NCBI RefSeq assembly: GCF_006345805.1
Contig: NC_043001.1
Span: 17,794,001-17,858,000, forward strand
DNA from: Octopus sinensis
Taxonomy: Eukaryota
DNA length: 64,000 nucleotides
Direction of reading: 5' to 3'
Shown here: piece after piece, positions 34,000 through 64,000 of the stretch
How positions within the stretch are numbered: position 1 is the stretch's first letter
Layout: each line of letters begins with the position of its first letter
Notes under the pieces: model-generated
Told to the model about the DNA's origin: nothing
The model's database searches: none
What the model saw: the letters and a program-made list of their open reading frames with translations, nothing else
Program-made: the position numbers and the translations under genes

Positions 34000-34037
<38 letters not shown>

Positions 34038-42310: not shown

Positions 42311-42383
42311 GGGGAATTAGCTCAGTTGGTAGAGCGCTCGCTTTGCATGCGAGAGGTATCGGGATCGATACCCGAATTCTCCA
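42311..42383 (+). tRNA. tRNA-Ala-TGC: tRNA-Ala(TGC) with compensatory T49:A65
   Basis: All stems paired; T-stem TCGGG/CCCGA. Confidence 0.9.
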
Positions 42384-43505: not shown

Positions 43506-43556
<51 letters not shown>

Positions 43557-44597: not shown

Positions 44598-44670
44598 GGG
44601 GAATTAGCTCAGTTGGTAGAGCGCTCGCTTTGCATGCGAGAGGTACCGGGATCGATACCCGGATTCTCCA
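44598..44670 (+). tRNA. tRNA-Ala-TGC: tRNA-Ala(TGC)
   Basis: Complete cloverleaf. Confidence 0.95.
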
Positions 44671-45376
44671 ATGATGTAAATTTTTGCTTTTGATATCTCG
44701 CCTATTACGTGATATCAATTGCATTTGAAATTACGTGTTTTGTGAAATTTTCATGTTCATAACAAAAACGTTTGATCCCTAACCGTGGAATTTTCGCTTT
44801 GCATGCAAGATGTCCTTGGATCGATTCTCAGATTCTCCAATAAAACTACTTTTTTATTTACTTTTGAAATTCGAGTTTTTGCTTTTTACCATATTTTGAA
44901 TATTTTGAATACACGACAAATGCTAGACAATCGCTTTGCATGCGAAAGCTACTGGGATCGATTCCCTGATTCTCCAATAAAGCTACTTTTGTATTCGATA
45001 TCTTGCCTATTACTTGATCTCATTTACATTTCAAATTCCGCGATTGTTTTTATTATATTATTATATACACAACAAATAGACAAATATATTGTCTTTGATA
45101 TCTTGTCTATCACTTGATTTCCTTTACTTTTGCAATTCCGATTTTTTTTCATATATATGACAAAAAGTTGCGTCCACTGAACAGGGAATTGGCTCAGATG
45201 GTAGATTGCCCGCTTTGACTGCGAGAGGCACCGGAATCGATTCCTGGATTCTCCCGTGAAATTAGTTTTGGTTTTGATATCCTGTTTATTATTCGACTTC
45301 ATTTTCATTTACATTTGAAACTAAGTGATTTTTTTAAAATTATTATATACACAACAAACTCTTCTCCTACTTAATT

Positions 45377-45449
45377 GGGGAATTAGCTCAGATGGTAGAG
45401 CGCTCGCTTTGCATGCGAGAGGTACCGGGATCGATACCCGGATTCTCCA
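45377..45449 (+). tRNA. tRNA-Ala-TGC: tRNA-Ala(TGC)
   Basis: Complete cloverleaf. Confidence 0.95.
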
Positions 45450-46170
45450 ATAATCTAAATTTTGTTTTTGAGATCTCGCCTATTACTTGATATCATTTGC
45501 ATTTGAAATTACGTGTTTTGTGAAATTTTCATGTTCATAACAAAAATCTTTGATCCCTAAGCGGGGAACTGATTCAGATAGAATTTTCGCTTTGCATGCA
45601 AGATGTACTGGGATCGATTCCCAGGACAAATATAAGATATATATATATATATAAAGATATATATAAAGATTTTAATATCTTATATATTTTCGCTTTGCAT
45701 TCAAAGATATATAAGATATCAAAAAATATATAAGATATTAAAAACTTGATTTCATTTTCATTTACATTTCAAATTTCACGATTTTTAAAAAATTATTATA
45801 TATATAACAAACACTTTTCTGGACTAACCGAGGAATTAATTCAGTTGGTATCGCGCACGATTTGCATACGTGTGGTATTGTGATCAATACCGAATTCTCC
45901 AATTGATCCGCTTTTTATTTTTAATAAGTTACCTGTTACTTAATTTCCTTTACTTTTGAAATTCCGGGTTTTGTTTTAAATTTTCATATACATGACAAAT
46001 GCCGATGGAAATATCTCAGGTGGTAGAACACTCTCTTGGAAAGCGAAAGGTGCCAGAAAGGATGTCCGGATTGTCCAATGAAGCTAATTTTGATTTTAAT
46101 AAATAGTCTTGGCTTCATTTGCATTTACTTTTGAAATTCCGCATTTTTAAAAAAAAATTTTCATATACAT

Positions 46171-46380
46171 AGGCGCAGGAGTGGCTGTGTGGTAAGTAGC
46201 CTGCTTACCAAATACACATGGTTTCGGGTTCAGTCCCAATGCGTAGCACCTTGGCCAAATGTCTTTTACTATAGCTTCGGGCCGACCAAAGCCTTGTGAA
46301 TGCATTTGGTGGGCGGAAACTGAAAGAAGCCTGTCGTATATATGTATGTATGCATGTATATTTATATTTATATATAAATG

Positions 46381-46442
<62 letters not shown>

Positions 46443-46451
46443 TATATATAT

Positions 46452-46512
<61 letters not shown>

Positions 46513-46544
46513 ATATATAAATACACACACACATATATATATAT

Positions 46545-46590
<46 letters not shown>

Positions 46591-46806
46591 TGTATGTTTG
46601 TGTGTCTCTGTTTGTCCCCCCAACATTACTTGACAACCGATGCTTGTGTGTTTACGTCCCCATAACTTAGCGGTTCGGCAAAAGAGACCAATAGAATAAG
46701 TATTAGGCTTACAAAGAATAAGTCCTGAGGTCGATTTGCTCGACTAAGGGCGGTGCTCCAGCATGGCCGCAGTCAAATGACTGAAACAAGTAAAAGAGTA
46801 AAAGAG
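46171..46806 (+). mobile_element. SINE family A with expanded internal (TA)n, inserted in the array
   Basis: Full head and tail. Confidence 0.9.
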
Positions 46807-46807
46807 A

Positions 46808-47510
46808 AATACCGCATACTCAACGACGCTGACCGTCATATGGAAAAGTTCACCAATCCAAGACCGGAAACGAAAGTGCCTGTTATGATCCCTTTCACTC
46901 TCGTCTTCCACACTACCTCCTTCAGTGTAGCTATTACGCAAAGGAAACTAGCCTGCTCTTTCCTATTGAAAGAAGACGGTGAAACAATCTTAATTATAGA
47001 CTCGGTTGACAGTTGTACTCTTCTCAGATGTGACAACAGTTGTTCGACATAAGTTCCGATGTCTTCGGACATTTCACAATTGCGTGCAGGAGAGTTCCAT
47101 TGTCCTCACCGCATCTTGGATAAGTTGGCGTGGCTGAAACATTACGCCTACAGAGTTTGTCCCGAACAGGTAAGGCACCTCTGTAACATTGCCATGCCAG
47201 GGGCTTTTGGAAATTGTCCAAAGGCCCTCGCCAGAATGTTCTTCGGTACAGGCTGGCGAGTTGACTATCATCAAAGCCCAGGGTTTCTCCCAGGGCGCCG
47301 TCACATTTAAACTCTACTAACCCTCTACAAAAGGTCGAAGTGGAACCCTTGTCGCCGGCGTTGCCCGCTTCGGAGAGAAGCACGAGTGCCTGACGATACT
47401 CTGCGTGCCAAGTTCCCAACTTCTGTCTACACTTAATCTATGGGCCCAGTTCAGTAAACGAGTTGAACCGTGGAAAGAATTGTCTGAAGAACGGAGACCA
47501 CACTTGCATA
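46808..47510 (-). mobile_element. L1/Tx1-like LINE ORF2 C-terminal fragment
   Basis: LAWQCYRGALPVRDKL...PRCG...TLLHAIVKCP resembles the zf-RVT/CCHC region, followed by LCVIATLKEVVWKTR. Confidence 0.75.
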
Positions 47511-49560
47511 CCGTCTATTACATGACATGATTTTTATTTGTTTCAAATTCAACGATTTCTTTTTTTAATTTTATACACTTCAGAAACACCTATGGACACA
47601 AAACTTGGGATCATCTCAAGTGGTAGAGGGCTCGCTTTGCATTCGAGAGATACCGGGATCGTTCACGGCTTCTCCAATTCAGCTGCATTTGTTTATAATA
47701 TCTTGTCTGTTACTTCATTTCATTTTCCTTTACATTCGGAATACCAGGATTTTTTTTAAATTTTCACATATATAACAGCAACAAACAGAGCGCTCGCTTT
47801 GCATGTGAGAGGTAACGGGTTCGATACCCGGATTCTCCAAGGAGGCTACTTTTGTTTTTAATAACTTTTCTATTACTTCATTGCTTTTACTTTTGAAATA
47901 CCTGGCTTTTCTTTTTTTAATTTTCATATACAGAGTAAAAAACCATGGTCACTAACTGGGAATTAGCTCAGGTGGTAGAACGCTCGTCTTATATTCAGGA
48001 GGTACCGGGTTCGAAACACTGAATCTCCAGTGAGGATACTTTATTTTTAATAACATGCCCATTGCTTCATTCCATTTTCATTTACTTTTGAAACTTTGGA
48101 GTTTTTTTTTAAAATTTTCATGTACATATCAAAAACCTATGACCGCTAACCAGCAATTATCCCAGGTAGTAGGGTGCTAGGATTCTGTAATGAATATACT
48201 TTTCCTTTTTAATAACTTGCTAATTAGTTCATTTCACTTACATTTACATTTGAAAACACCGGGATTTTTTAAAATTTTCAAGTACACAACAAAATCCTCA
48301 CTTTGCTCAGCTTAGAATTAGCTCAAAATATAGGGCGCTCGCTTTGCATGTGATACGTACCGGGATCAGTCAACGGATTCTCCAGACATCTTATCTCTTG
48401 TTTCATTTTATTTTTATTTACTTTTGAAATTCCCGGAATTTTATTTTCATTTTCATATACATAACAATAAGCTGGGGGCGCCAAGCGAGGAATTAGTTCA
48501 GATGGTAAAGCGAACGCTTTGCATGTGAGAGGTGTCGGTATCAATGCCATGATTTTCCAATTGAGATGCTTTGCTTTTAATAACTTGTCTATTACTTGAT
48601 ATCTTTCTCAATTTCTTTTGAATTTCCGGTTTTTTTATAAAATATTCATATATATAGTAAAACCTTTGCCTACTCATAGAATTAGCTCAGAATATAAGGC
48701 GCTCGCTTTGTTTGCCTATGAAAAGATGAAAACAAACCCAGAATATCAAAAGTAAATGAAATCAAGCAATAGGAAAGCCATTAAAAACAAAAGAAACTTC
48801 ACTGGAGAATCTGGGAATCGATCTCTACACCTCTCGCGTGCAAAGTGAGCGCTCTACAATCTGAGCTAAATACCCGGCTGCAGACCAAAAACTTTTGTTT
48901 TGTGTATATACATTTAAAAAAAAACAACCTTGAAAAGAAATGTAAATGAAATGAATGGACAAGGATATTAAAAGTAGATTTAATTGAATAAGCTAGGTAT
49001 CGATCTAGCTATCTTTCACAAGCAAAGCGAGCGATCTACCGTCTGAACTAATTCTCTGATTAGTGTCTGAATGCCTATCATCTGCTTTTGTTCTGTATAT
49101 GAAAATTCAAAATAATCCCGGCATTTTGAATCTAAATGAAAATGACATCAAGTAATAGAGAAATTATAAAAAACGAAAGAAGCTTCTTTGGTGGATCCGG
49201 GTATCGATCCCGGTACCTCGCACACGCAAAGCAAGTGCTCTGCAATCGGAGATAATTTCCCAGTCCGCGCCTACAAATGTTTTTTGTGCATATGAAAAGT
49301 TGAAAACACCCGGAATATGAAAACTAAATGAAACAAATAGACAAGTTATCAAAAACGAAAGAAAATTCGTTTGAGAGTCTGAGCATCCAGGTACCCCTCA
49401 CACTCAAGACAAGATCTCTGCCATTTTGGACAATTCCCCAGTTAGCAACCATAGGTTTTTGTTATATATATATGAAAATTTAATAAACTTCCAGGAATTT
49501 CAGAACTAAGTGTAAATGTGTGTAATAGACAAATTATTAAAAGGTAAAAAGTAGATTTAT

Positions 49561-49633
49561 TGGAGAATCCGGGTATCGATCCCGGTACCTCTCGCATGCT
49601 AAGCGAGCGCTCTACCATCTGAGCTAATTCCCC
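49561..49633 (-). tRNA. tRNA-Ala-AGC: tRNA-Ala(AGC), T-loop ATCGATA
   Basis: Complete cloverleaf. Confidence 0.93.
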
Positions 49634-50875
49634 GCACTCCTGCTGTCGGCGTTTGTTGTGCATATGAAATATTGAAAACAAAGTCAGGACGTCAAAACTA
49701 AATGAAATCAAGTGATAGATAAGTTATTAAAAGCAAATGTAGTATTACTGGAGAATACGGACATCGATCCCGGTAGCTCCCGCATGCAAAACGAGCGCAC
49801 CACCTCTTGAGCTAAAATCTTTGTTAGCGACCATGGATGTTTGTTATGCATATGAAAACAAAAAAAAATCGCAGAATTTAAAACGCATATGAAAAGGAAC
49901 TCAAGAGACAACGAAATTAAAGAACGAAATTAGTTTTACTGGAGAATCTGGATATCGATCCTGGTATCTCTCGCATGTAAAGCGAGCGCTCTACCAACAG
50001 AGAACATTTGGCGGTTAGTAAATACAGCTTTTGTTTGTTTTGTTTTTGTTTTTGTTTTTCCAGTTTCAGCTCTTGAGCTGTGGCCATGCTGGGGCACCGC
50101 CATTGTGGTGAAAGAGTACAGCAGGGATCACCACCCCCTGCCGGAGCCTCGTAGAGCTTTTAGGTGTTTTCGCTCAATAAACACACACAACGCCCGGTCT
50201 GAGAATCGAAACCGCGATCCTGCGACCGCGAGTCCGCTGCCCTAACCAGTAGGCCATTGCGCCTCTACAATGTTTTTTTTAAAAACTCGGAATTTCAAAA
50301 GTAAATGAAATCAAATAAAAGTAATGTTATGAAAATGAAACGCAGCTTTCCTGAAGAATCCGTAAATTGATACCGGTTCCTCTCGCATGGAAAGCGAACG
50401 CTCTACGTCTTCAAGTATTTCCTCGCTTAACGGACGTAGGTTTTTTTTTATGTATATGAAATTTTTTATTAAAAAATCAGGGCATTTCAAAAGAAAATGA
50501 AATGAAACGAGACAAGATATCAAAACAAAAGTAGTATTACTGAAGAATCAGTGAACTGATCCGGGTACATATTGCATGCAGAGTGAGCGCCCTATATTCT
50601 GAGCTAATTCTACGCTTAGTAAACACAGATTTTGCTACGTACATGAATATTCTTTAAAAGCCCCGGAAATTCAAAAGAAATTGAAAAGGATATCAAGTAA
50701 TAGACAAGTTTTAAAAAGAAAGTGGCTCGTTGCATTGATACCATTACGTCTCGCGTTGTAAGGTGAGCCTTTACTGGCTTTGGTCATGCATGTGAAATGT
50801 TTTTTAAATTCCTGAATTTCGAAATTCAATGAAAAATATCAATTGATAAATTATTAAAAATGAAAGAAGTCTCCT

Positions 50876-50948
50876 TGGAGAATCCGGGTATCGATCCCGG
50901 TACCTCTCGCATGCAAAGCGAGCGCTCTACCATCTGAGCTAATTCCCC
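50876..50948 (-). tRNA. tRNA-Ala-TGC: tRNA-Ala(TGC)
   Basis: Complete cloverleaf. Confidence 0.95.
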
Positions 50949-52190
50949 AGCTAGCCTCTCTCTACGTTTGTTATTCATATGAAAAGTTTAAAGCAAACCC
51001 AGCATATCAAAACTAAATCAAACAAAAGAATCTTCAGTGGAAAATCCGGGTATCGATCTCGCATGCAAAGCGAGCGCACTACAATCTGAGTTAATTCCCC
51101 GGGTACAGACCAGAGATTTTTCTTATGTATATTTTTTTAAACCTAGAATTTCAAATGTAAATGAAAATAAAAAGAAGTAATAGACAAGTTATGGGTCTTT
51201 TCCCTTTGAATAACAGTGACAAACGAAATATACACTGCCGATAGTTGTTGTTGACAAACAACGGCAGTAATATTATTCAGCTGAATACACGTTATTGATT
51301 GGTTGAAATTACCGAAATTCTGGTTTTATTTAAATTTTCGTATACAAAACAAAAGCACATGATACGGATTCAGTCACTGACCGGGGAATTAACTCCGACT
51401 GTAGATCGCCCGCTTTGATTGTGAAAGGTGTCGGTATCAATGCCATGATTCTCCAATTGAGATGCTTTGTTTTTAATAACTTGTCTATTACTTGATATCT
51501 TTCTCAATTTCTTTTGATATTTCCGGTAAACCTATGTTTACTCAGATTATGGAGCAATTGCTTTGTATTCGATATGTACGGATTCTCCAGTAATACTATT
51601 TTTGTTTTGATATCTTATCTCTTGTTTCATTTCATTTCCATTTACTTTTCAAATTCCCGAATTTAAAAAAAATTTTTCGTATAATTAAAAAAAAACGTGT
51701 GAAATAGTTAAGAGGGTAGAACGCTCATTTTGCGTGCGAGAGGTACTGGGATCGATTCCCGAATTCTTCTAGAAATCTACGTTTCATTTTAATAACTTTT
51801 GTTTTATTTCATTTCATTTACTTTTAAAACTTCTGGGTTTGTTTTTTTTCATTTTCATATACATAACAAAAGCTTTGGTGACTTACCTGAGAATTGGCTC
51901 TGTTGGTAGATCGCTTTGCATGTATGAGATACTTTGGATCGATGTCCGGATTCTTCTGTGAAACCAATTTCGCTGATTTCATTTTCATATGCTTTTTAAA
52001 TTCTACGGTTTTTTTTCCATATGCGTAACAAACATCCACGGTCCCTAAGAGGGAGTTTTGCATGCGGGAACCACCGGAATCGTTGTCCGCATTCTCCAAT
52101 TATGTTTTGTTTGTTTTTAATAACTTCTCTATTACTTGATTTCATTTAGTTTTGATATTTTTGCAAAACAAACGTCAAAAGTAGTTATCC

Positions 52191-52263
52191 GGGGAATTAG
52201 CTCAGATGGTAGAGCGCTCGCTTAGCATGCGAGAGGTACCGGGATCGATACCCGGATTCTCCA
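52191..52263 (+). tRNA. tRNA-Ala-AGC: tRNA-Ala(AGC), T-loop ATCGATA
   Basis: Complete cloverleaf. Confidence 0.93.
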
Positions 52264-52320
52264 ACAAAGTTTCTTATCGTTTTAATAATTTATCCGTTAC
52301 ATGATATCATTTGCACTTGG

Positions 52321-52740
52321 GGATCTTTTCGGTTTGAACGGCAGTTTTTACCAATTTCTAAGTAACTAAAAAATGTTGAACTTCGTATACTGGTAGAATG
52401 TGTTTATAAAACATCTTTTTCTCTTGGCTTTATTGAGAAAATTCTATAGTTTGTAAGATATTTATGGTTCTTCTTCAATTTCTGCAATTTCAACCAATCA
52501 ATGACGTCTATTGAGGTGAAAACATTCTGTGCGTATGAATATGTCCCTCCTTTAGGAAACAGATTGGGTTTATTTACATTTCTGAAGAAAAAAAGATACC
52601 CTTCCCCCCACCCCTAACCCTAACTAACCGTAACCCTAAAACAGATTGAAATGCAATAGATCGATACTAGGGTCAGAATTATGGGTGACAATTTCATATG
52701 ACACCGCTAGAAAAAACTGCCGTTCAAACCGAAAGGATCC
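52321..52740. mobile_element. MITE (same family as 36822)
   Basis: Both TIRs present. Confidence 0.88.
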
Positions 52741-53301
52741 AATATATCAAAAAACCGATTGTTGCGTATTGAGGAATTAGCCCAGATGGTAATGAGCTAA
52801 CTCGGATTCTCCATTGAAGTTTCTTTTGTTTTTAATAACTTGTCTATTACATGATTTCATTTAGTTTTGATAGTCCGGCTTTGTTTTCAACTTCCCATAT
52901 GTATAACAAATGCCTGTAACCGCTGACATAACAATTACCGGGGTCGCCAACCGAAGAATAAGCTCAGATGATAGATCGCACGCTTTGCATGTGAGAGGTG
53001 TCGATATCAATTCCATGATTCTCCAATGGAGCTGCTTCGCTTTTACTACTTGACTATTACTTGGTATCTTTTTCAATTTCTTTTGAATTTCCGGGTCCGG
53101 GAAACCTATCTTTATTCAGCGTAGAATTAGCTCAGAATATAGGGCGCTCGCTTTGTATGCGGTATATTCCGGGATCAGCTCACGGACTCTCCAGTAATGC
53201 TACTTTTGTTTTCGAATCTTATCCCTTGTTTCATTTTATTTTTATTTACTTTTGAAATTCCCGAATTTATTTCAAAATTTTCATATACACAGAAAAGCCT
53301 G

Positions 53302-53718
53302 GTATCTCTTCAGTTTGAACGGCAGTTTTTTCTAGCAGTGTCATATGAAATTGTCACCCATAATTATGACCCTAGTATCGATCTATTGCATTTCAATCTG
53401 TTTTAGGGTTTGGGTTAGGGGTGGGGGAAGGGTATCTTTTTTACTTCACAAATGTAAATAAACCCAATCTGTTTCTTAAACGAGGGACATATTCATAAGG
53501 CACAGAATGTTGTTTACCTGAATAGACGTCAGTGATTGGCTGAAATTGCAGAAATTGAAGAAAAAAAACAACAAATATCTTACAAACTATAGAATTTTCT
53601 CAAAAAAGCCAAGAGAAAAAGATGTTTTATAAACACATTCTACCAGTATAGGAAGTTTAAAATTTTTTAGTTACCTACAAATTATGTTAAAAAACTGCCG
53701 TTCAAATCGAAAAGATCC
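53302..53718. mobile_element. MITE, opposite orientation; right end at an inversion breakpoint
   Basis: Both TIRs present (left one degenerate). Confidence 0.85.
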
Positions 53719-54025
53719 AGCGAGCGCCCTATATTCTGAGCTAATTCTACGCTGAGTAAACAGGTTTTGCTATGTATATGATTATTCTTTAAAAGCCCCG
53801 GAAATTCAAAAGAAATTGACAAAAATAACAAGTAATGGACAAGTATTAAATAGAAGGTGGCTCATTGCATTTATACCATTACGTCTCACATTGTAAAGTG
53901 AGCACTCGTCTGGTGACCGTTCACTGGTTTTTGTTATGCATATGAAAATTTTTTTAAATTTCCGAATTTCGAAATTCAATGAAAGATAGCAATTGACAAA
54001 TTATTAAAAACGAAAGCAGTTTCCT

Positions 54026-54098
54026 TGGAGAATCCGGGTATCGATCCCAGTACCTCTCGCATGCAAAGCGAGCGTTCTACCATCTGAGCTAATTCCTC
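54026..54098 (-). pseudogene. tRNA-Ala(TGC) probable pseudogene
   Basis: A2:C71 mismatch and broken D-stem (GAAC); paralog of intact 50876. Confidence 0.75.
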
Positions 54099-54531
54099 AG
54101 CTTGCTTCTGTAGACGTTTGTTATGCATATGAAAAGTTTAAAGCAAACCCAGAATATCGAAACTAAATCAAACAAAAGAATCTTCAGTGGAGAATCCAGG
54201 TATCGATCTCGCTACCATCTCGCATGCAAAGCGAGCGCTCTACCATCTGAGCTAACTCACCGGGGACACAGCTGAGATTTTTGTTATGTATATAATTTTT
54301 ATTTTTTAAATCTTACAATTTCAAATGTAAATGAAAATATAATGAATAGACAAGTTATGGGTCTTTTCCTGTGTACTACTAGCGAAGAGTGATCCCGATG
54401 CGCGCAAGCGCGTACTCGCGCAACCGTGCTAGCAAGTCATGACTAGTTTGTTTTTAATAACTCGTCTATTACTTCATTTCATTTAGTTTTCAACATTACA
54501 TATACAAAACAAACATCCAAACCAGTTGTCC

Positions 54532-54604
54532 GGGGAATTAGCTCAGATGGTAGAGCTCTCGCTTTGCATGCGAGCGGTACCGGGATCGATACCCGGATTC
54601 TCCA
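54532..54604 (+). tRNA. tRNA-Ala-TGC: tRNA-Ala(TGC) variant, G26T and A44C
   Basis: All four stems intact; changes only at the 26/44 hinge. Confidence 0.7.
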
Positions 54605-54686
54605 ACAAATCTTCTTATCGTTTTATTAATTTGTCTCTTACATGATATCATTTGCAATTTAATAAAATTCCGGGAATGTTATTAAA

Positions 54687-55009
54687 TTTTCTCTTGGCTT
54701 TCTTAAAAAACATCTATAGTTTGTAAGATATTTGGGTTTTTTTTCTGCAATTTCAACCAACCACTGACGTCTATTGAGGTAAAAAAAAAACATTCTGTGC
54801 CGTATGAATATGTCCCTCGTTTAAGAAACAGATTGAGTTTAATTACATTTGTGAAGAAAAAAAATATACCCTTCCCCCCACCCTAACCCTAACTAACCCT
54901 AACCCTAAAACAGATTGAAATGCAATAGATCGATACTAGGGTCAGAATTATGGGTGACAATTTCATATGACACCGCTAGAAAAAACTGCCGTTCAAACCG
55001 AAAGGATCC
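54687..55009. mobile_element. MITE, left end deleted
   Basis: Internal sequence plus right TIR. Confidence 0.8.
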
Positions 55010-55198
55010 AATATATTAAAAAAACCGATTGTTGCGTATTGAGGAATTAGCCCAGATGGTAATGAGCTTGCCCGGATTCTCCATTGAAGTTTCATTTGTT
55101 TTTAATAACTTGTCTCTTACATGATTTCATTTAGTTTTGATATTCCAGCTTTGTTTCCAACTTCTCATATGTATAACAAATGTCTGTAACCGCTGACC

Positions 55199-55271
55199 GG
55201 GGAATTAGCTCAGATGGTAGAGCGCTCGCTTCGCATGCGAGAGGTACCGGGATCGATACCCGGATTCTCCA
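55199..55271 (+). tRNA. tRNA-Ala-CGC: tRNA-Ala(CGC)
   Basis: Complete cloverleaf, loop TTCGCAT. Confidence 0.95.
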
Positions 55272-55550
55272 ACAAGTCTTCTCAACGTTTTGATAATTTT
55301 TCTGTTACATGATATTATTTGCACTTAGTTTTGAATTTCAGGGAATTTCACTAAATTTTCGTATATATCAAAAAACTAGTGGTTACGTAATTGGGAGTTA
55401 GCCCAGATGGCCAGAGAGCTTGCCTGGATTCTCCAATAATGCTACTTTTGTTTTTAATAACTTGTCTATTATTCGATTTCATTTAGTTTTGATATTCCTA
55501 CTTTGTTTTCAACTTTTCATATGCATAACAAATGCTCGTAACTGTTGGCT

Positions 55551-55623
55551 GGGGAATTAGCTCAGGTGGTAGAGCGCTCGCTTAGCATGCGAGATGTACC
55601 GGGATCGATGCCCGGATTCTCCA
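55551..55623 (+). tRNA. tRNA-Ala-AGC: tRNA-Ala(AGC), variable loop ATGTA
   Basis: Stems intact; T-loop ATCGATG. Confidence 0.88.
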
Positions 55624-56093
55624 ATGAAGCTACTTCTTACTTTTAAAAGTTTGTCTATTGCTTGATTTCGTTATCACTTAGTTTTGAAATTCTTGGATTT
55701 TTTTTTAATTGTCATATACATAACAATAACCGGGGTCGCCAACCGAGGAATTAGCTCAGATGATAGAACGCACGTTTTGCATGTGAGAGGTGTCGATATC
55801 AATTCCATGATTCTCCAATGGAGCTGCTTCGCTTTTACTACTTGACTATTACTAGGTATCTTTATCAATCTCTTTTGAATTTCCGGGTCCGGGAAACCTA
55901 TGTTTATTCAGCGTAGAATTCGCTCAGAATATAGGGCGCTCGCTTTGTATGCGGTATATTCCGGGATCAGTCCACGGATTCTCCAGTAATGCTATTTTTG
56001 TTTTCGTATCTTATCCCTTGTTTCATTTTATTTTTATTTACTTTTGAATTTCCCGAATTTATTTTAAAATTTTCATATACATAAAAAAACCTG

Positions 56094-56517
56094 GGATCTT
56101 TTCGGTTTGCACGGCAGTTTTTTCTAGCAGTGTCATATGAAATTGTCACCCATAATTATAACCCTAGTATCCATCTATTGCATTTCAATCTGTTTTAGGG
56201 TTAGGGTTAGGGTTAGGGGTGTCGGAAGGGTATCTTTTTTACTTCACAAATGTAAATAAACACAATCTGTTTCTTAAACGAGGGACATATTCATACGGCA
56301 CAGAATGTTGTTTACCTGAATAGACGTCAGTGATTGGTCGAAATTGCAGAAATTGAAGAAAAAAAAACAACAAATATCTTACAAACCACAGAATTTTCTC
56401 AATAAAGTCAAGAGAAAAAGATGTTTTATAAACACATTCTACCAGTATACGAAGTTTTAAAGTGTTTAGTTACGTGGAAATTATTTCAAAAAACTGCCGT
56501 TCAAACCGAAAAGATCC
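56094..56517. mobile_element. MITE with 8-bp target-site duplication AAAACCTG
   Basis: TSD at 56086-56093 and 56518-56525; empty-site paralog near 57700. Confidence 0.92.
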
Positions 56518-56931
56518 AAAACCTGTGTGAGAAATAGTTGAGAGGGTAGAGCGCTCATTTTGCGTGCGAGAGGTACCGGGATCGATTCCCGGATTTTTCT
56601 GGAAAGCTATTTTAATAACCTTTGTTTTATTTCATTTCATTTACTTTTGAAACTTCTGGGGTTTTTTTCATTTTCATATACATAACAAAAGCTGTGGTTA
56701 CTAACCTGGGAACTGGCTCTGTTGGTAGATCGCAAGTTTTCTTATCGTTTTATTTATTTGTCTCTTACATGATATCATTTGCAATTTAATAAAATTCCGG
56801 GAATTTTATTAAATTTTCGTAAATATATAAAAAAAACCGATGGTTACGTAATGGGGAATTAGCCCAGATGGCAGAGGGCATGCTCGGTTCCAACTTCTCA
56901 TATGTATAACAAATGCCTGTAATCGTCGACC

Positions 56932-57004
56932 GGGGAATTAGCTCAGGTGGTAGAGCGCTCGCTTCGCATGCGAGAGGTACCGGGATCGATACCCGGATTC
57001 TCCA
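56932..57004 (+). tRNA. tRNA-Ala-CGC: tRNA-Ala(CGC)
   Basis: Complete cloverleaf. Confidence 0.95.
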
Positions 57005-58218
57005 ACAAGTCTTCTTATCGTTTTGATAATTTTTCTGTTACATGATATTATTTGCACTTAGTTTTGAATTTCAGGGAATTTCACTAAATTCTCGTATATA
57101 TCAAAAAACTAGTGGTTACGTGATTGGGAGTTAGCCCAGATTGCAGAGAGCTTGCCCGGGTTCTCCAATAATACTACCTTTGTTTTTAATAACTTGTCTA
57201 TTATTTGATTTCATTTAGTTTTGATATTCCTACTTTGTTTTCAACTTTTCATATGCATAACAAATGCCCGTTATTGATGGCTGGGGAATTCACTTGGTTT
57301 TGAAATTCTGGGATTTTTTTTTTTAATTGTCATATACATAACAATAACCGGGGTCGCCAACCGAAGAATTAGCTCAGATGATAGATCGCACGCTTTGCAT
57401 GTGAGAGGTGTCGATATCAATTCCATGATTCTCCAATGGAGCTGCTTCGCTTTTACTACTTGTCTTTTACATGGTATCTTTTTCAATCTCTTTTGAATTC
57501 CCGGGTCCGGGAAACCCATGTTTATTCAGCGTAGAATTAGCTCAGAATATAGGGCGCTCGCTTTGTATGCGGTATATTCCGGATCAGCCCACGGGTTCTC
57601 CAGTAATGCTACTTTTGTTTTGATATCTTGTCTCTTTTTTCACTTCATTTTCATTTACTTTTGAAATTCTCGAATTTATTTTAAAATTTTCATATACATA
57701 AAAAAAAAACTTGTGTGAGAAATAGTTGAGAGGGTAGACCGCTCGTTTTGCGTGCGAGAGGTACTGGGATCGATTCCCGAATTCTTCTGGAAAGCTACGT
57801 TTCATTTTAATAACTTTTGTTTTATTTCATTTCATTTACTTTTAAAACTTCCGGGGTTTTTTTTTTTCATTTTCATATACATAACAAAAGCTCTGGGGAC
57901 TAACCTGGGAACTGGCTCTCTTGCTAGATAGCTTTGCAAGTGTGAGATACTTTGGATCGATTTCCGGATTCTTCTGTGAAACTAATTTCGCTGATTTCAT
58001 TTTCATATGCTTTTTAAATTCTACGATTTCCTTCCATATGCATAACAAACATCCACGGTCCCTAAGAGGGAGTTTTGCATGCGAGAGCCACCGGGATCGA
58101 TGTCCGCATTCTCCAATTATGTTTTGTTTGTTTTTAGTAACTTCTCTATTACTTGATTTCATTTAGTTTTGATAGTCCGGCTTTACATATACAAAACAAA
58201 CGTCCGAAGTAATTGTCC

Positions 58219-58291
58219 GGGGAATTAGCTCAGATGGTAGAGCGCTCGCTTTGCATGCGAGAGGTACCGGGATCGATACCCGGATTCTCCA
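58219..58291 (+). tRNA. tRNA-Ala-TGC: tRNA-Ala(TGC)
   Basis: Complete cloverleaf. Confidence 0.95.
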
Positions 58292-58340
58292 CAACTTTTC
58301 TTATCGTTTTAATAATTTATCCGTTATCATTTGCACTTGG

Positions 58341-58759
58341 GGCTCTTTTCGATTTGATCGGCAGTTTTTAACAATTTCTAAGTAACTAAAAAATGTTAAA
58401 CTTCGTATACTGGTAGAATGTGTTTATAAAACATCTTTTTCTCTTGGCTTTATTGAGAAAATTCTATAGTTTGTAAGATATTTGTTGTTCTTCAATTTCT
58501 GCAATTTCAACCAATCAATGACCTCTATTGAGGTGAAAACATTCTGTGCCGTATGAATATGTCCATCGTTTAGGAAACAGATTGGGTTTATTTACATTTG
58601 TGAAGAAAAAAAAGATACCCTTCCCCCCACCCCTAACCCTAACTAACCCTAACCCTAAAACAAATTGAAATGCAATAGATCGATACTAGGGTCATAATTA
58701 TGGGGGACAATTTCATATGACACCGCTAGAAAAAACTGCCGTTCAAACCGAAAAGATCC
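58341..58759. mobile_element. MITE, same insertion junctions as 52321
   Basis: Both TIRs; flanks cacttgg and aatatatc. Confidence 0.88.
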
Positions 58760-58947
58760 AATATATCAAAAACCCGATGGCCACGTGATGAGGAATTAGC
58801 CCAGATGGTAATGAGCTTGCTCGGATTCTCCATTGAAGTTTCTTTTGTTTCTAATAACTTGTCTCTTACATGATTTCATTTAGTTTTGATATTCCAGCTT
58901 TGTTTTCAACTTCTCATATGTATAACAAATGACGGTAACTGCTGACC

Positions 58948-59020
58948 GGGGAATTAGCTCAGGTGGTAGAGCGCTCGCTTTGCATGCGAGAGGTACCGGG
59001 ATCGATACCCGGATTCTCCA
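58948..59020 (+). tRNA. tRNA-Ala-TGC: tRNA-Ala(TGC)
   Basis: Complete cloverleaf. Confidence 0.95.
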
Positions 59021-59860
59021 ACAAATCTTATAGTTTTGATAATTTGTCTGTTAACGATATCATTTGCACTTAGTTTTGAAATTCTGGGATTTTTTGTTTA
59101 ATTGTCATATACATAACAATAACCGGGGTCGCCAACCGAGGAATTAGCTCAGATGATAGATCGCACGTTTTGCATGTGAGAGGTGTCGATATCAATTCCA
59201 TGATTCTCCAATGGAACTGCTTCGCTTTTAATACTTGTCTGTTACCTGGTATCCTTTTCAATTTCTTTCGAACTTCCAGGGCATTTAAAAAAATATTCAT
59301 ATACATAGCAAAACCTATGTTTATTCAGCATGGAATTAGCTCAGGATATAGTGCACTCGCTTTACATGCGATATGTACTGGGATCAATCCACAGATTCTC
59401 CAGTAATACTACTTTTGTTTCCATATCTTGTCTCTTGTTTCATTTCATTTTCATTTACTTTCGAAATTCCCGAATTTAAAAAAAAATTTCGTATACATAA
59501 AACACACCAATGTTTGTTAACCGGGGAAATAGCGGAAAGGGTAGAATGCTCGCTTTACATATGGGAGGTAGCCGTAGCGATTCCTGGATTCTTCACGCGG
59601 TGTTTCATTTTAATAACCTGTCTTTTATTTCATCGCATTTAATTTTGAAATTCCGGTTGTTTGTTTCTTTTCTAAATTTTCATTTACATAACAAAAATGC
59701 GGTCACTAACTGTGTAGTTGGCTCTGGTACACCAAAAGTATTTGCATGTGAGACGCACCGAGAACGGTGTCCGGATTCTCCCGTGAAACTAATTTCGTTT
59801 TCAATAAATTGTCTATTATGTGAGTTCATTTTCATTTGCTTTTAAATACCACGATTTTTC

Positions 59861-60290
59861 GGGAGGGGCGGTGGACCGGAGCGTAGGGAGGACCTCACGG
59901 ACTTCCACGTCGGTTCTCCGCGACTCTCGGGGCGGAAGCGGAATGCTGTGAAGGGCCGATCACAGCCATTGACGTGGAGGAGGCATTGTCGGACAACGGC
60001 GAGGACAAGTCGCCGGGACAAGATGGTCTTCCATACAAACTGTATTATAGCATGCTAGACTTGTTTGGACACCTACTTGCATGCGTCTATAACAACTGGC
60101 AGTAGAAGTGGGGTATTCCCAAGTCTGTGAGCCGGTGACGCTGCTACGAAAGGCCCCAAACAAGGGGGACGTAATTGATAATTTTAGGCCCATCACTCTG
60201 CGTAACACAGAAGATTTTGGCCAAGGTATTAACAAAAAGGTTGGCGCAGGTCATGGATAGTCTTGTTGGGGAGGCCCAAACATACATCAT
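59861..60290 (+). mobile_element. L1/Tx1-like LINE internal fragment (RT N-terminal region)
   Basis: GPITAIDVEEAL...DKSPGQDGLPY...NFRPITLRNT...ILAKVLTKRLAQVMDSLVGEAQT with a stop and frameshifts. Confidence 0.85.
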
Positions 60291-60924
60291 GATTCTATTT
60301 TCCACGATTTTCTAAAAAATTATTATATATATATAACAAATATTTCTGGGGTCTTACCGTGGAATTAGCGTAGTGGGTAGAGCGCTCGCCTGACATGCTA
60401 AAAGTATCGGGAATCGATGTCTTTATTCTCCAACACGCTAATTTTGTTTTCGATATCTCGTCAGTTTTTTTTTTTTATTTTGGCTTTTAAAATTCTGGGT
60501 TTTGTAAAATTTTCGTACGCAAAATAAAAACTATGATCCATAATCGGGGAATTAACTCAGATAGTAGAACGCTCGCTTTGCATATGAGAGGTACTAGGAT
60601 CAATTCCCAGAATCTCCAATAAAACTACTTTCGTATTTGATATCTTGTCTATCACTTGATTTCCTTTTCATTTAATTTTGCAATTTTTTTTTTTTAATTT
60701 CCATATACATGACAAAAGGTTGCGTCCACTGAACGAGGAATAGGCTCAGATGGTTGACTGCTCACTTTGACTGCGAGAGGTACCGGAATCGATACCTGGA
60801 TTCTCCATTGAAACTACTTTTAGTTTTGATATCTTCTTTATTACTTCATTTCATTTACATTTCAAATTCAGCGAATTTTTTAAAAAATTATTATATACCC
60901 AACAAACATGATTCCTAGTTAACG

Positions 60925-60997
60925 GGGGAATTAGCTCAGTCGGTAGAGTGCTCGCTTTGCATGCGAGAGGTACCGGGATCGATACCCGGATTCTCCA
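60925..60997 (+). tRNA. tRNA-Ala-TGC: tRNA-Ala(TGC), G10:U25 wobble
   Basis: Complete cloverleaf with C25T. Confidence 0.85.
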
Positions 60998-62322
60998 ATA
61001 ATGTAAACTCTTGTTTTTGATATCCCGCCTATTACTTGATATCATTTGCATTTGAAATTACGTGTTTTGTGAAATTTTCATATTCATAACAAAAACGTTT
61101 GATCCATAACCTGGAAATTAACACGCTTTGCATGCAAGATGTCCTGGGATCGATTCCCAGATTCCCAAATAAAGCTACTTCTGTTTTTAATATCATGCCT
61201 ATCACTTTCATTTACTTTCGCAATTCCGGTTTTCTTTTTCTATATCTTGATATACATGACAAATAGTTGCGTGCACTAGACCTAGATGACTCATATGGTA
61301 GATTGCTCGCTCTGACTGCGACAGGTACTGGAAATAATGCCCGGATTCTCTAATGAAACTACTTTTCGTTTTGATATTTTGTGTATTACGTGATTTCATT
61401 TTCATTTACTATTGGAATTCCGGGGTTTTTTAAAATTTACATATACGTAAGAAAAAACCAATCATCTCTAACCGGGGAATTATCTCAGCTGGTAGAGCGC
61501 TCTCTTTGTATGTGAAAGATACCAGAAAGGACCTATGGATTCACCAGTGATACTAATTTTACTTTTAATAATTTGTCTATTGCTTGAATTCATTTTCATT
61601 TACTTTTGAAATTCCGCCATTTTTTAAATATATAATGACAAACACGCATCGATGCTGACCAGGTAATTAGCGCATAGGGTAAAGCACTCACTTTGCATGC
61701 GAGTGGCCCGGGAATCGATATCCGGATTTTCCAATGAAGCTGCCTTTATTTCGAATAAGTTATGTAATACTTAATTTTATTTTTCTTTACTTCTGAAATT
61801 CCAGGATTTTTTCTTAATTTTTTTTCCTAAATGTTCGCTTTTTTTTTCTAATAAGTTGTCTAAAACTTTTTTACATTTTTCTTTTCTTTTGAAATTCTGG
61901 GTCTTTTCAAATTTTCAAATACATAAAAACAACAACACAACGCTAGTCCCTCACCGCGGAATTGGATCAGAGCGTAGAGCATTCGCTTTGCGTGCAAGAT
62001 GTGCCAGGAATCGATACCAGAATTCTCCAAAACTACTAATTATGTTTTTGATAGATCGTCTATTGCTTAATCTCATTTGAAATTCCGGGCTTTGGAAAAT
62101 TTTCATATACATAACAGAAACGCTTGATCTCTAACTGGGAAATTAACTCAAATAGTAGAACGCTCGCTTTGCATGCGAGAGCTACTGGGATCGATTCCCG
62201 GGTTCTCCAATAAAGCTATTTTCGTTTTTGATATCTTGTCTATTACTTGATTTCATCTTCATTTACATTTCAAATTCCGCAATTTTTTATAAATTATCAT
62301 ATACACAACAAACATGTTAAGT

Positions 62323-62395
62323 GGGGAATTAGCTCAGATGGTAGAGCGCTCGCTTTGCATGCGAGAGGTACCGGGATCGATACCCGGATTCTCCA
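62323..62395 (+). tRNA. tRNA-Ala-TGC: tRNA-Ala(TGC)
   Basis: Complete cloverleaf. Confidence 0.95.
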
Positions 62396-63299
62396 TTGAA
62401 GAGATTTTTGCTTTTATAAGTTGTCTATTACATTTTCCTTTACTTTTGAAATTCCGGGTTTTTGTTGTTTTTTTTCATTTTCATATACATAAAAAAATGC
62501 TGCAGTCTCTTACCGCGGAATTAGGTCAGAGAGTAGAGCGCTCGCTTTGCATGTGTGGAGTCCTACCAATCGATTCCAGGATTCTCTAATAATGTCAATT
62601 TTGTTTTTGATAACTCGTCTATTACTTGATATCATTTGCATTTGAAATTTCTGATTTCGTAAAATTTTCAAATACTTAACAAAAAACGGGGAATTAAATC
62701 AGATAGTAGAACGCTCGCTTTGCATGCGAGAGATACTGTGATCGATTCCCGGAATCTCCAATAAAGCTACTTTTGTTTTTAATATCTTGTCTATCACTTG
62801 ATTTCATTTTCATTTACTTTTCAAATTCAGATTTTTTTAATTTAATTTTCATATACATGACTAAATTTTGTGTGCACCAAAAGGGGTAGATCGATCGCTT
62901 TGATATCAACAGGTACCAGGATTGATGCCCCGTTTCTTCAATACAGCTAATTTTCATTTTAATATCTTGTCTATTAATAAGATTTCATTTTCATTTACAG
63001 TTGAAATTCCGAGGTTTTTTTTTTAAATTTCTACATACATAACAAAAACAAATATTCACTCACAGGGGAATTACATCAGAGGGTAGAGCGATCGATGCAT
63101 GGATTCTGGGATCGATGCATGGTCCTGGGATCGATGCATGGATTCTCCGATGAAGCTAATTTTTTTTCTGATCTCATTTATTACTTAATTTCATTTTCAT
63201 TTACTTTTGAAATTCCGCGTTGTCTGAAATTTTTCATATACATAACGAAAACTTATGGTCATTAACCGGGGAATTAGCCCAGGTGATAGAACGCTCGCC

Positions 63300-64000
63300 T
63301 TAACTTAAAATCAGAATTTTAGGCTAAATATCAGTAGAAAAAATACCCAAAAAGGCTAAAAAATTCTAAACATGACAAAAAAATGCTGAAGACTAATTAT
63401 ATCAAAATGCCTAATTTTTATTTACATTTTTATTTACTTTTTTTAATTGTATTCAGCATTGAGAAATACCTTCTTGAATTTCACTGATTTGATCACTTTC
63501 AGCTGCAGGTCTTGACTTCTGTATACATTCAAGGTCCCAATCTTGTTAGTTATGTGTTTTGGAATATCGAAGATTTTGCAACATTTGCCATATCTTTACA
63601 GGCCATATTTTATTGACAGTATTGATCTAAGCATAGGAAAATGCATTTTGTTTTTCAATTTTGATTTGACTACACCCATACTACTGAACAACCGTTCAAC
63701 TTCTGCATTTGCGTTTGGCAATGTCAATAGATTAATGGTAAAATTTGCAACATCTCTAAAAGGATTTCCCCCAGTAGCATCTTTATATCTTTATATTCCA
63801 AGACTTCCAGTCAGAATGCCTCAGTATTAGACGTATTTGTCCATTTAACTAAATGAATGCTATTAAACTGAATTTCAGTTGAAGCATTTTGTTCTTCATT
63901 TAAATGCATTGCTTCTAAGACAGGTAAAATTGGTTCTTTGAAATGCTGCAAAATATTCTTTACTGAAAAACATTTGATATTCTTCAGTATATTAATATTT
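63300..64000 (-). mobile_element. hAT transposon fragment (transposase C-terminal dimerisation region), continues beyond the window
   Basis: Minus-strand NPFRDVANFTINLLTLPNANAEVERLFSSMGVVKSKLKNKMHFPMLRSILSIKYGL; stops and a frameshift. Confidence 0.8.

What the first reader, a model, noticed from the sequence alone, without database searches (positions are those of the whole stretch)
52191..59020. Anticodon switching caught between positional paralogs: AGC/TGC and CGC/TGC
52191 (AGC) and 58219 (TGC) follow the same three pseudogenes and precede the same MITE junction, and differ only at position 34. 56932 (CGC) and 58948 (TGC) share flanks and also differ only at position 34; 55199 (CGC) is a third member. 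All three eukaryotic Ala isoacceptors thus interconvert within one array, while GGC, which eukaryotes generally avoid alongside A34/I34, is absent. AlaRS indifference to the anticodon makes such switches viable. The array may act as a generator of isoacceptors.
Basis: partly seen in the sequence, partly recalled or inferred. Interest (0 to 1): 0.8.

Follow-up and report, generated by a model that had tools for sequence, protein, structure and literature searches.

The report
tRNA-Ala array with wobble-base anticodon switches
A 25-kb tandem array of alanine tRNA genes and decayed copies holds recently duplicated genes that differ only at the first anticodon base, a clear but expected example of a known way that tRNA gene families change.

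Summary
The window carries 24 tRNA-Ala genes. 52191 (AGC) and 58219 (TGC) differ only at position 34, and so do 56932 (CGC) and 58948 (TGC). 55199 (CGC) is the sister copy of 56932.

The genes lie in a roughly 25-kb array (38137-63305) of about 100 units of ~187 bp. Each unit derives from a tRNA-Ala gene. 82 units are pseudogenes and 16 are clearly intact.

A flank-only tree does not group genes by anticodon: (52191 AGC, 58219 TGC) has 100% bootstrap. T34 is ancestral: 77 of 82 pseudogenes carry it, and it is the parsimony root. AGC and CGC therefore arose from TGC 3-4 times. One ancestral slot now reads TGC (58948), CGC (55199, 56932) and AGC (55551).

Gene bodies are conserved against diverged flanks, and the boundaries of conservation are sharp. 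Position 34 changes about as often as a neutral site (4 changes seen, 2.4 expected).

The best reading is tandem duplication, purifying selection on the tRNA body, and a free wobble base, because AlaRS reads G3:U70 rather than the anticodon. Gene conversion is not excluded. The "generator" idea is not needed, and the absence of GGC is uninformative. Isoacceptor shifts are already documented in Drosophila, primates and nematodes.

The parts
38137..63305 (+). Tandem array of about 100 tRNA-Ala(TGC)-derived units of ~187 bp. 82 are pseudogenes, 16 are clearly intact genes and 3 are decaying. It is organised in higher-order repeats, with inverted blocks at about 48.7-51.2 kb and 53.7-54.4 kb. It is interrupted at 46.1-47.6 kb and cut off in mid-unit at 63305.
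   Evidence: blastn of the consensus tRNA gives 106 hits. TRF finds period 186 at 62132-63047. Self-blast; unit table; sequence at the array edges.
51314..53026 (+). Higher-order repeat copy A: pseudogene units, slot-X gene 52191 (AGC), the inverted-repeat element, and an internally deleted pseudogene. The slot-Y gene has been lost through a ~404-bp deletion.
57302..59021 (+). Higher-order repeat copy C: the same pseudogene units, slot-X gene 58219 (TGC), the inverted-repeat element, the deleted pseudogene, and slot-Y gene 58948 (TGC).
   Evidence: 85.7% to copy A; core substitution divergence 6.1%.
54446..56520 (+). Higher-order repeat copy B: slot-X gene 54532 (TGC), a 5'-truncated inverted-repeat element, then a tandemly duplicated slot Y (55199 CGC and 55551 AGC), two pseudogenes and a reversed inverted-repeat element.
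   Evidence: (52109-52318 ~ 54446-54659 at 87.9%; 55363-56086 ~ 58761-59502 at 82%).
56888..57706 (+). Partial copy B', a young duplicate of 55155-56089. It carries 56932 (CGC) and lacks about 115 bp (55559-55673) that hold the 55551 AGC gene.
   Evidence: 55155-55558 ~ 56888-57290 at 95.05%; 55674-56089 ~ 57290-57706 at 93.1%.
52191..52263 (+). tRNA-Ala(AGC), slot X. A34 at window 52224. The body is identical to 58219 except at position 34.
   Evidence: (59.4 bits).
58219..58291 (+). tRNA-Ala(TGC), slot X. T34 at window 58252.
   Evidence: (62.2 bits).
54532..54604 (+). tRNA-Ala(TGC), third slot-X member, with two private body changes (G26T, A44C).
   Evidence: (100% bootstrap with 52191 and 58219).
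55199..55271 (+). tRNA-Ala(CGC), slot Y, first copy of the tandem pair. C34 at window 55232.
   Evidence: 60.6 bits; upstream 95% to 58948, downstream 97% to 56932.
55551..55623 (+). tRNA-Ala(AGC), slot Y, second copy of the tandem pair. A34 at window 55584. It also has G16, T45 and G60, so its body matches the dispersed AGC gene 29265 except at position 45.
   Evidence: (54.3 bits).
56932..57004 (+). tRNA-Ala(CGC), a young duplicate of 55199. C34 at window 56965.
   Evidence: 58.9 bits; 89% bootstrap with 55199.
58948..59020 (+). tRNA-Ala(TGC), slot Y in copy C. T34 at window 58981.
   Evidence: (60.4 bits).
49561..49633 (-). tRNA-Ala(AGC) in an inverted block. The body is identical to 52191. 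Position 34 is at window 49600.
52321..52745 (+). Non-autonomous element of ~424 bp with 29-nt terminal inverted repeats (GGATCTTTTCGGTTTGAACGGCAGTTTTT) and internal TTAGGG-like repeats. Other copies: 36819-37242 (+), 53304-53719 (-), 54687-55017 (+, truncated), 56094-56520 (-, with an 8-bp CAGGTTTT target duplication) and 58341-58764 (+). The copies are 91-96% identical.
29265..36544 (.). Five dispersed tRNA-Ala(AGC) genes lying outside the ~187-bp array: 29265+, 31058+, 31675-, 34370- and 36472-. All have G60. 31058 and 31675 form an inverted duplicate.

Best explanation
This is a tandemly amplified tRNA-Ala gene family evolving by birth and death.

A founder unit, a tRNA-Ala(UGC) gene plus about 115 bp of spacer, was amplified into a ~187-bp array. 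Most units decayed into pseudogenes. Blocks holding one or two surviving genes were then re-duplicated as higher-order repeats by unequal crossing-over.

In the surviving genes, purifying selection holds the 73-nt mature tRNA almost constant. The exceptions are the sites that do not matter: D-loop position 16, T-loop position 60 and wobble position 34. Position 34 is free because alanyl-tRNA synthetase recognises the G3:U70 pair and not the anticodon (established knowledge). Single substitutions at position 34 therefore turned TGC copies into AGC (52191, 49561, 55551) and CGC (the ancestor of 55199 and 56932) without disabling them. Recently separated paralogs now decode with different wobble bases.

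Shown here: the duplications, the paralogy of the flanks, the ancestral T34, the constraint on the gene body, and intact Pol III signals.

Inferred: that the genes are expressed, that each change was a point mutation rather than a conversion, and that the changes are near-neutral.
For: - Array structure and the split between pseudogenes and intact genes.
- Paralogy from flanks alone: the NJ tree on +/-110 bp gives (52191 AGC, 58219 TGC) 100%, that pair plus 54532 TGC 100%, and (55199, 56932) 89%. A mixed clade {49561 AGC, 55199 and 56932 CGC, 55551 AGC, 58948 TGC} has 72%.
- Ancestral state T34: 77 of 82 pseudogene units, and Fitch root {T} with 4 steps.
- Constraint on the body: body differences number 0-3 in 73, against flank divergence of 8-31%, with P from 0.05 down to 1e-10. 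The mean column majority is 0.98 inside the gene, against 0.3-0.6 at -1 to -18 and from +5 onward. Conservation therefore starts at G1 and ends at A73.
- A compensatory T-stem change (C49T with G65A) in 42311.
- G3:U70 is present in every gene checked.
- All 16 intact array genes have a T4-6 run at +5 to +18 and a TATA-like CATATRYAYAACAAA motif at about -32 to -17.
- Position 34 behaves like a neutral site: 4 changes against 2.4 expected on a flank tree of length 2.4 substitutions per site. Position 16 shows 5 changes.
- The literature documents the same process. Of 44 isoacceptor shifts, 39 were at the first anticodon base, with U<->C the commonest (PMC3923123). Anticodon shift after tandem duplication has been proposed as the origin of mixed-anticodon clusters (PMC2997554). 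Thr AGT->CGT and AGT->TGT remoldings recur in primates (PMC4981973).
Against: - No expression data, read data or population data are available.
- For the youngest pair (52191/58219) the body is not significantly more conserved than its 6%-diverged surroundings.
- 52191 and 49561 have identical bodies. 55551 combines A34 with G60, exactly as the dispersed AGC genes do. At least some 'switches' could therefore be conversion tracts rather than new mutations.
- If the low mutability of T sites is taken into account, 3-4 changes at position 34 is somewhat more than expected. Pseudogene mismatch is 6% at position 34 against a mean of 22%. This gives Poisson P = 0.005-0.13, which hints that the changes may not be purely neutral.
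Confidence: 0.65

Rival explanations
1. The anticodon differences were moved by ectopic gene conversion, not made by independent point mutations. The alanine tRNA bodies are at least 95% identical. Short conversion tracts from an AGC (or CGC) donor could therefore overwrite position 34 of a TGC copy and leave the flanks untouched.
For: - 55551 sits in array-type flanks (82-83% to those of 58948). Its body carries G16, A34 and G60, the haplotype of the dispersed AGC gene 29265. G60 occurs in no other intact array gene.
- 52191 and 49561 have identical bodies although they lie in different flank clades.
- All six combinations of position 16 (A or G) with position 34 (A, T or C) occur.
- Intergenic conversion among tRNA genes is established in S. 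pombe (cited in PMC4981973).
Against: - Conservation stops exactly at the gene ends in every copy. That fits selection on the mature tRNA better than conversion tracts with random end points.
- Position 60 is hypervariable in the pseudogenes (T 29, G 27, A 17, C 8), so G60 could have arisen independently.
- No CGC donor exists in the window outside the 55199/56932 pair.
- A tract covering only position 34 cannot be told apart from a point mutation.
Confidence: 0.2
2. The array copies are dead relics of a tRNA-derived satellite. The 'intact' copies are simply the least decayed, and the position-34 differences are ordinary neutral mutations with no consequence for decoding.
For: - 82 of about 100 units are clearly pseudogenes, and there is a continuum of decay (54026, 54188, 38185).
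- There are no expression data.
- Published work finds that many recent remoldings occur in pseudogenes (PMC4981973).
Against: - Bodies stay 97-100% identical while flanks and neighbouring pseudogene units of the same repeat copies have diverged by 12-30%.
- 42311 carries a compensatory stem change.
- Terminator runs and an upstream TATA-like motif are kept at every intact gene.
- Infernal scores of 54-64 bits compare with 29-44 bits for the decaying copies.
Confidence: 0.08
3. The array is a selected 'generator'. Wobble-base diversification among duplicated copies is favoured so as to tune the supply of the three alanine isoacceptors.
For: - Position 34 is the most variable site among intact genes (10 of 23 carry the minority base) but one of the least variable among pseudogenes (6% against a mean of 22%).
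- Non-T at position 34 occurs in 5 of 16 intact array genes against 5 of 82 pseudogenes (Fisher P = 0.0096).
Against: - Counted as events, the contrast weakens: 3 of 14 against 5 of 82, P = 0.09.
- Against an average neutral site, 4 changes on a tree of length 2.4 is unremarkable (P = 0.22-0.43).
- Five AGC genes already lie 2-9 kb away from the array.
- No codon-usage or expression data are available.
Confidence: 0.05
4. The position-34 differences are assembly or consensus errors in a repeat-rich region.
For: The region is highly repetitive, and no reads were available to check it.
Against: - C34 is present in two paralogs whose flanks differ by 5% (55199, 56932).
- A34 is present in three array genes with distinct flanks.
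- The paralogs differ by 6-30% in their flanks, so collapse of copies or cross-polishing is unlikely.
Confidence: 0.02

Closest known systems
Isoacceptor anticodon shifts, also called tRNA remolding, in nuclear genomes (Rogers et al. 2010, PMC2997554; Rogers & Griffiths-Jones 2014, PMC3923123; Velandia-Huerto et al. 2016, PMC4981973)
   Same: - Homologous tRNA genes are recognised by their flanks.
- They differ by a single substitution at the first anticodon base.
- The body is otherwise unchanged and the amino-acid identity is kept.
- U->C is among the changes.
- The process has been proposed to explain clusters with mixed anticodons after tandem duplication.
   Different: - Here the shifts are seen between paralogs inside one genome and one array, not between orthologs of different species.
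- Three or four shifts occur within about 10 kb.
- A single ancestral slot has yielded all three alanine anticodons.
- Direction is given by about 80 fossil pseudogene units rather than by an outgroup species.
Large homogeneous tRNA gene clusters and tandem tRNA arrays in eukaryotes (survey in Bermudez-Santana et al. 2010, PMC2888827; Entamoeba arrays, zebrafish and Nematostella expansions; from my own knowledge, the Arabidopsis chromosome 1 Pro and Tyr/Ser arrays)
   Same: Head-to-tail, mostly parallel tRNA genes for one amino acid, mixed with pseudogenes and turning over rapidly.
   Different: - The period is very short (~187 bp).
- About 80% of the units are decayed.
- Higher-order repeats each keep one or two conserved genes.
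- The organism is unidentified.
Concerted evolution of tRNA genes by intergenic conversion (S. pombe serine tRNA genes, Amstutz et al. 1985, cited in PMC4981973)
   Same: Near-identical tRNA bodies sit in unrelated flanks. This mechanism could move an anticodon base between copies.
   Different: No conversion tract could be demonstrated. The conserved region coincides exactly with the mature tRNA, which selection alone explains.

Membership tests
Isoacceptor anticodon shift (tRNA remolding) | Homology of the compared genes is established from flanking sequence, not from the tRNA body | tested here: met
   The flank-only NJ tree gives 100% for (52191, 58219) and 89% for (55199, 56932). There is a 1.7-kb colinear alignment that includes the shared inverted-repeat element.
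Isoacceptor anticodon shift (tRNA remolding) | The anticodons differ but specify the same amino acid, through a single base change | tested here: met
   AGC, TGC and CGC differ only at position 34.
Isoacceptor anticodon shift (tRNA remolding) | Both partners keep an intact tRNA structure and identity elements | tested here: met
   Rfam tRNA scores are 54-62 bits. G3:U70 is present in all. T-run terminators lie at +5 to +18.
Isoacceptor anticodon shift (tRNA remolding) | The direction of change is inferable | tested here: met
   T34 occurs in 77 of 82 pseudogene units. The Fitch root is {T}, with 4 steps.
Isoacceptor anticodon shift (tRNA remolding) | The shifted gene is expressed and used in translation | not testable with these tools
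   No RNA or ChIP data are available.
Tandem tRNA gene array under birth-and-death evolution | Regular head-to-tail repeat units, each derived from a tRNA gene | tested here: met
   There are 106 consensus hits at a spacing of about 187 bp. TRF finds period 186.
Tandem tRNA gene array under birth-and-death evolution | Conserved genes coexist with decayed copies in the same duplicated blocks | tested here: met
   In copies A and C the pseudogene units differ by 4-8 substitutions and the gene by 1. Across the array the pseudogenes match the consensus at 65-88% and the genes at 95-100%.
Concerted evolution by gene conversion | Homogenised tracts whose ends do not coincide with functional boundaries, or mosaic donor haplotypes | tested here: inconclusive
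   Conservation stops exactly at positions 1 and 73, which argues against conversion. The A34 + G60 haplotype of 55551 in array-type flanks is compatible with it.

The most novel reading that the evidence does not exclude
Wobble-position changes in this array may be favoured rather than merely tolerated. Position 34 is among the most stable sites in the 82 neutral pseudogene units, yet it is the most variable site in the conserved genes. In addition, the exact gene body is carried almost only by the AGC isoacceptor in unrelated eukaryotic contigs (14 of 15 exact matches). The whole ~100-unit TGC array may therefore descend from an earlier AGC->TGC switch. On this reading, repeated anticodon switching on one frozen body would be how this lineage sets its supply of alanine isoacceptors.
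Probability: 0.1. Interest if true: 0.6.

Novelty: new member of a known kind. Interest (0 to 1): 0.35.

Why it matters
This is a compact example, contained within one genome, of how tRNA gene families change their decoding capacity. The duplication history is readable from the flanks. The fossil pseudogenes give the ancestral state. One slot has diversified into all three alanine anticodons. The locus could serve as a teaching case, or as a test locus for measuring how free the wobble base really is in a tRNA whose synthetase ignores the anticodon. It does not change current understanding.

Tried and rejected
- CpG-deamination hot spot (C34-G35 is a CpG, so CGC->TGC). Rejected: CpG observed/expected is about 1.0 across the window and 1.09 in the array, and parsimony points to T->C rather than C->T.
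- 'A60 marks a TGC-type body and G60 an AGC-type body'. Rejected as a diagnostic: position 60 is hypervariable in the pseudogenes, and unrelated organisms carry AGC with A60.
- Recombination breakpoint inside the tRNA gene, to explain the mosaic flanks of 55199. Not needed: the left edge of the 55155-56089 -> 56888-57706 duplication lies 44 bp upstream of the gene.
- Identifying the organism. All attempts failed:
  - Exact-protein look-ups of window ORFs found nothing.
  - Reverse-transcriptase homologs lead only to unnamed assemblies (GCA_024449705.1, ERZ25073829).
  - Literature searches by accession and by sequence string found nothing.
  - A mollusc or cephalopod origin is only my recollection-based guess, from the TTAGGG-like repeats, the richness in microsatellites and the look of the SINE-like elements.
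- Orthologous or related arrays. The metagenome scan found the same tRNA body in 12 contigs from 6 sources, but none shares flanks with the window.
- Excess-of-change tests at position 34 gave P values from 0.005 to 0.43 depending on the neutral rate assumed. This is not decisive.

Full report
**Observation**

ARAGORN finds 24 tRNA-Ala genes between 29.2 and 62.4 kb. Rfam's tRNA model confirms them at 30-64 bits. Extracting the sequences gives the following:
- 52191-52263 (AGC) and 58219-58291 (TGC) are identical except at position 34 (window 52224 = A, 58252 = T).
- 56932-57004 (CGC) and 58948-59020 (TGC) are identical except at position 34 (56965 = C, 58981 = T).
- 55199-55271 (CGC) differs from 56932 only at D-loop position 16.
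- All of these genes keep G3:U70.

**What the region is**

A consensus tRNA finds 106 tRNA-Ala-like stretches. From 38137 to 63305 they follow one another about every 187 bp, and TRF reports period 186. I aligned every unit to the consensus. In the array, 82 units are pseudogenes (65-88% identity). Sixteen are clearly intact (95-100%) and three are decaying (38185, 54026, 54188).

The array is organised in higher-order repeats. One example is 38849-40276 against 41189-42670 at 86%. Inverted blocks lie at about 48.7-51.2 kb and 53.7-54.4 kb. The array breaks off in the middle of a unit at 63305. Five further AGC genes (29265-36544) lie dispersed in transposon-rich DNA just to its left.

**Duplication history around the finding**

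Copy A (51314-53026) aligns with copy C (57302-59021) at 85.7%. The core shows 6.1% substitutions. Both copies carry three homologous pseudogene units, then the slot-X gene (52191 AGC or 58219 TGC). Then, at the same junction, both carry a ~424-bp element with 29-nt terminal inverted repeats, followed by an internally deleted pseudogene.

Copy B (54446-56520) carries the third slot-X gene, 54532 (TGC).

Slot Y follows:
- Copy C has one gene, 58948 (TGC).
- Copy B has a tandem duplication of the block [deleted pseudogene + gene]. This gives 55199 (CGC) and 55551 (AGC). The upstream 120 bp of 55199 is 95% identical to that of 58948. The flanks of 55551 are 82-83% identical to those of 58948.
- Segment 56888-57706 is a young copy (93-95%) of 55155-56089. 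It carries 56932 (CGC) and has lost about 115 bp that hold the AGC gene.
- Copy A has lost the slot-Y gene through a deletion of about 404 bp.

One ancestral slot therefore now reads TGC, CGC and AGC.

**Flank tree**

I built a neighbour-joining tree on +/-110 bp of flank with the tRNA body removed.
- (52191 AGC, 58219 TGC) has 100% bootstrap.
- That pair plus 54532 TGC has 100%.
- (55199, 56932) has 89%.
- A clade mixing all three anticodons {49561 AGC, 55199, 56932, 55551 AGC, 58948 TGC} has 72%.

That outcome did not occur, so the claim stands.

**Direction of change**

Position 34 is T in 77 of 82 pseudogene units, A in 3, G in 2 and C in none. Fitch parsimony on the flank tree gives root state T and 4 changes. 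AGC and CGC are therefore derived from TGC inside the array, with T->A two or three times and T->C once. This is one-way change, not free interconversion.

**Constraint and function**

Bodies differ at 0-3 of 73 sites, while their +/-100-200 bp flanks differ by 8-31%. The binomial P ranges from 0.05 down to 1e-10. For the youngest pair (52191/58219) the contrast is weak, because 8.9% of 73-column windows in the A/C alignment have one substitution or fewer.

Conservation begins at G1 and ends at A73. The column majority is 0.98 inside the gene and 0.3-0.6 immediately outside. This fits selection on the mature tRNA.

Other signs of function:
- 42311 carries a compensatory T-stem change, C49T with G65A.
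- Every intact array gene has a run of 4-6 T at +5 to +18.
- Every intact array gene has a TATA-like CATATRYAYAACAAA motif at about -32 to -17.

Among intact genes, the sites that vary in more than two genes are 16, 34 and 60. Positions 16 and 60 are classic non-conserved loop positions.

**Is position 34 neutral or favoured?**

The flank tree of the 16 intact array genes has a total length of 2.4 substitutions per site. A neutral site would therefore change about 2.4 times. Position 34 changed 4 times and position 16 five times. Against that yardstick there is no excess (P = 0.22-0.43).

T sites mutate less in this AT-rich DNA. If their lower rate is used, the expectation falls to 1.26 or 0.66 changes and P falls to 0.13-0.005. 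A raw comparison gives Fisher P = 0.0096 (5 of 16 intact genes non-T against 5 of 82 pseudogenes). Counted as events, it gives P = 0.09. The hint of an excess is not decisive.

CpG observed/expected is about 1, so a methyl-CpG hot spot at C34-G35 is not supported.

**Point mutation or conversion?**

52191 and 49561 have identical bodies. 55551 combines G16, A34 and G60, exactly as the dispersed AGC gene 29265 does, yet it lies in array-type flanks. Short conversion tracts could therefore have moved A34. However, position 60 is hypervariable in the pseudogenes, and no tract boundaries are visible. This remains open.

**Wider context**

An exact-pattern scan of metagenome contigs, with N allowed at positions 16, 17, 34 and 60, found this body in 12 contigs from six sources with unrelated flanks. 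Of 15 exact matches, 14 are AGC and one is TGC. In contig L009, neighbouring TGC and CGC genes share a body of their own. That body differs from the AGC body at four sites, and the two genes differ from each other only at positions 15, 16 and 34. This is an independent U/C pair on one body. In other eukaryotes this body is thus mainly the AGC body. The founder of the array may itself have been a switched AGC gene. That is an inference I could not test.

**Comparison with the literature**

- Rogers & Griffiths-Jones (PMC3923123) report 44 isoacceptor shifts, 39 at the first anticodon base, with U<->C the commonest.
- Rogers et al. (PMC2997554) propose anticodon shift after tandem duplication as the origin of mixed-anticodon clusters.
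- Velandia-Huerto et al. (PMC4981973) report recurrent Thr AGT->CGT and AGT->TGT remoldings. They also note that many recent remoldings lie in pseudogenes, and that tRNA genes undergo intergenic conversion.
- Bermudez-Santana et al. (PMC2888827) document large, fast-changing tRNA clusters in many eukaryotes.

The present locus is a new and unusually legible instance of this known process.

**Verdict**

The mechanism is tandem duplication plus purifying selection on the body plus a free wobble base, with confidence of about 0.65. Conversion is the main rival. The 'generator' idea and the argument from the absence of GGC add nothing that the data require. Interest is about 0.35.

Noticed in passing
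window 37868-38133; also 6475-6672, 24000-24198, 24407-24666, 50103-50269: SINE-like repeat with a tRNA-like head (GGGGCACATGGCCCAGTGGTTAGAGCAGCGGACTCGCGG...GGTTCGAATC). The copies are 81-92% identical. One copy lies inside the tRNA-Ala array, and one abuts its left edge.
   Followed up: no
window 5695-6155, 9823-10255, 10436-10837, 13079-13499, 15597-16027, 34541-34953, 46169-46809 (partial copies at 29409-29643 and 30272-30478): A dispersed repeat family of about 420 bp, found in both orientations at 85-93% identity. Several copies flank or contain microsatellites. It was not classified.
   Followed up: no
window 1986-2352, 21438-22055, 13558-13908, 15008-15239, 27505-27664: A 184/217-bp repeat found both in tandem and dispersed (...CCTTTCGGGGTCGATAAATTAAGTACCAGTT...), at 84-95% identity. 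It is probably a SINE-like family.
   Followed up: no
window 19918-20409 (-) and 33319-33771 (-): Transposon remnants. One is a mariner-like transposase N-terminal ORF of 163 aa. The other is a C-terminal fragment of a non-LTR reverse transcriptase, 150 aa, 72% identical to a protein from assembly GCA_024449705.1.
   Followed up: partly
window 31058-31130 (+) and 31675-31747 (-): Two AGC genes form an inverted duplication. The bodies are identical, 120 bp of downstream flank is 100% identical and the upstream flank 87%. The arms are about 545 bp apart, so the structure is a palindrome.
   Followed up: partly
window 42311-42383: This TGC gene carries a compensatory T-stem double change (C49T with G65A, so C:G becomes T:A). 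This is direct evidence that the stem is under selection.
   Followed up: yes
window 52768-52815, 58787-58834, about 55040 and about 55400: Pseudogene units with the same internal deletion (GAGGAATTAGCCCAGATGGTAATGAGCT..CTCGGATTCTCCA) lie just upstream of each slot-Y gene. They serve as a marker that identifies the slot.
   Followed up: partly
window 56094-56520 (-): This copy of the inverted-repeat element is flanked by an 8-bp direct repeat (CAGGTTTT), which suggests a hAT-like origin. The element contains TTAGGG-like repeats (CCCTAACCCTAAC...).
   Followed up: partly
window 315-889, 22451-23292, 28614-28816: Long simple repeats: (TCT)n of about 575 bp, (TTA)n of about 840 bp, and a 16-bp minisatellite (GTTACGACTGAGTTCC, 12.7 copies). 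TA, TG and AC microsatellites are frequent throughout the window.
   Followed up: no
L009 999-1394 (metagenome contig Ga0115011_10218675): An unrelated eukaryotic contig carries Ala-TGC, Ala-AGC and Ala-CGC in tandem within 400 bp. The TGC and CGC genes share one body, differing only at positions 15, 16 and 34, and that body is distinct from the AGC body. This is an independent U34/C34 pair on one body.
   Followed up: partly
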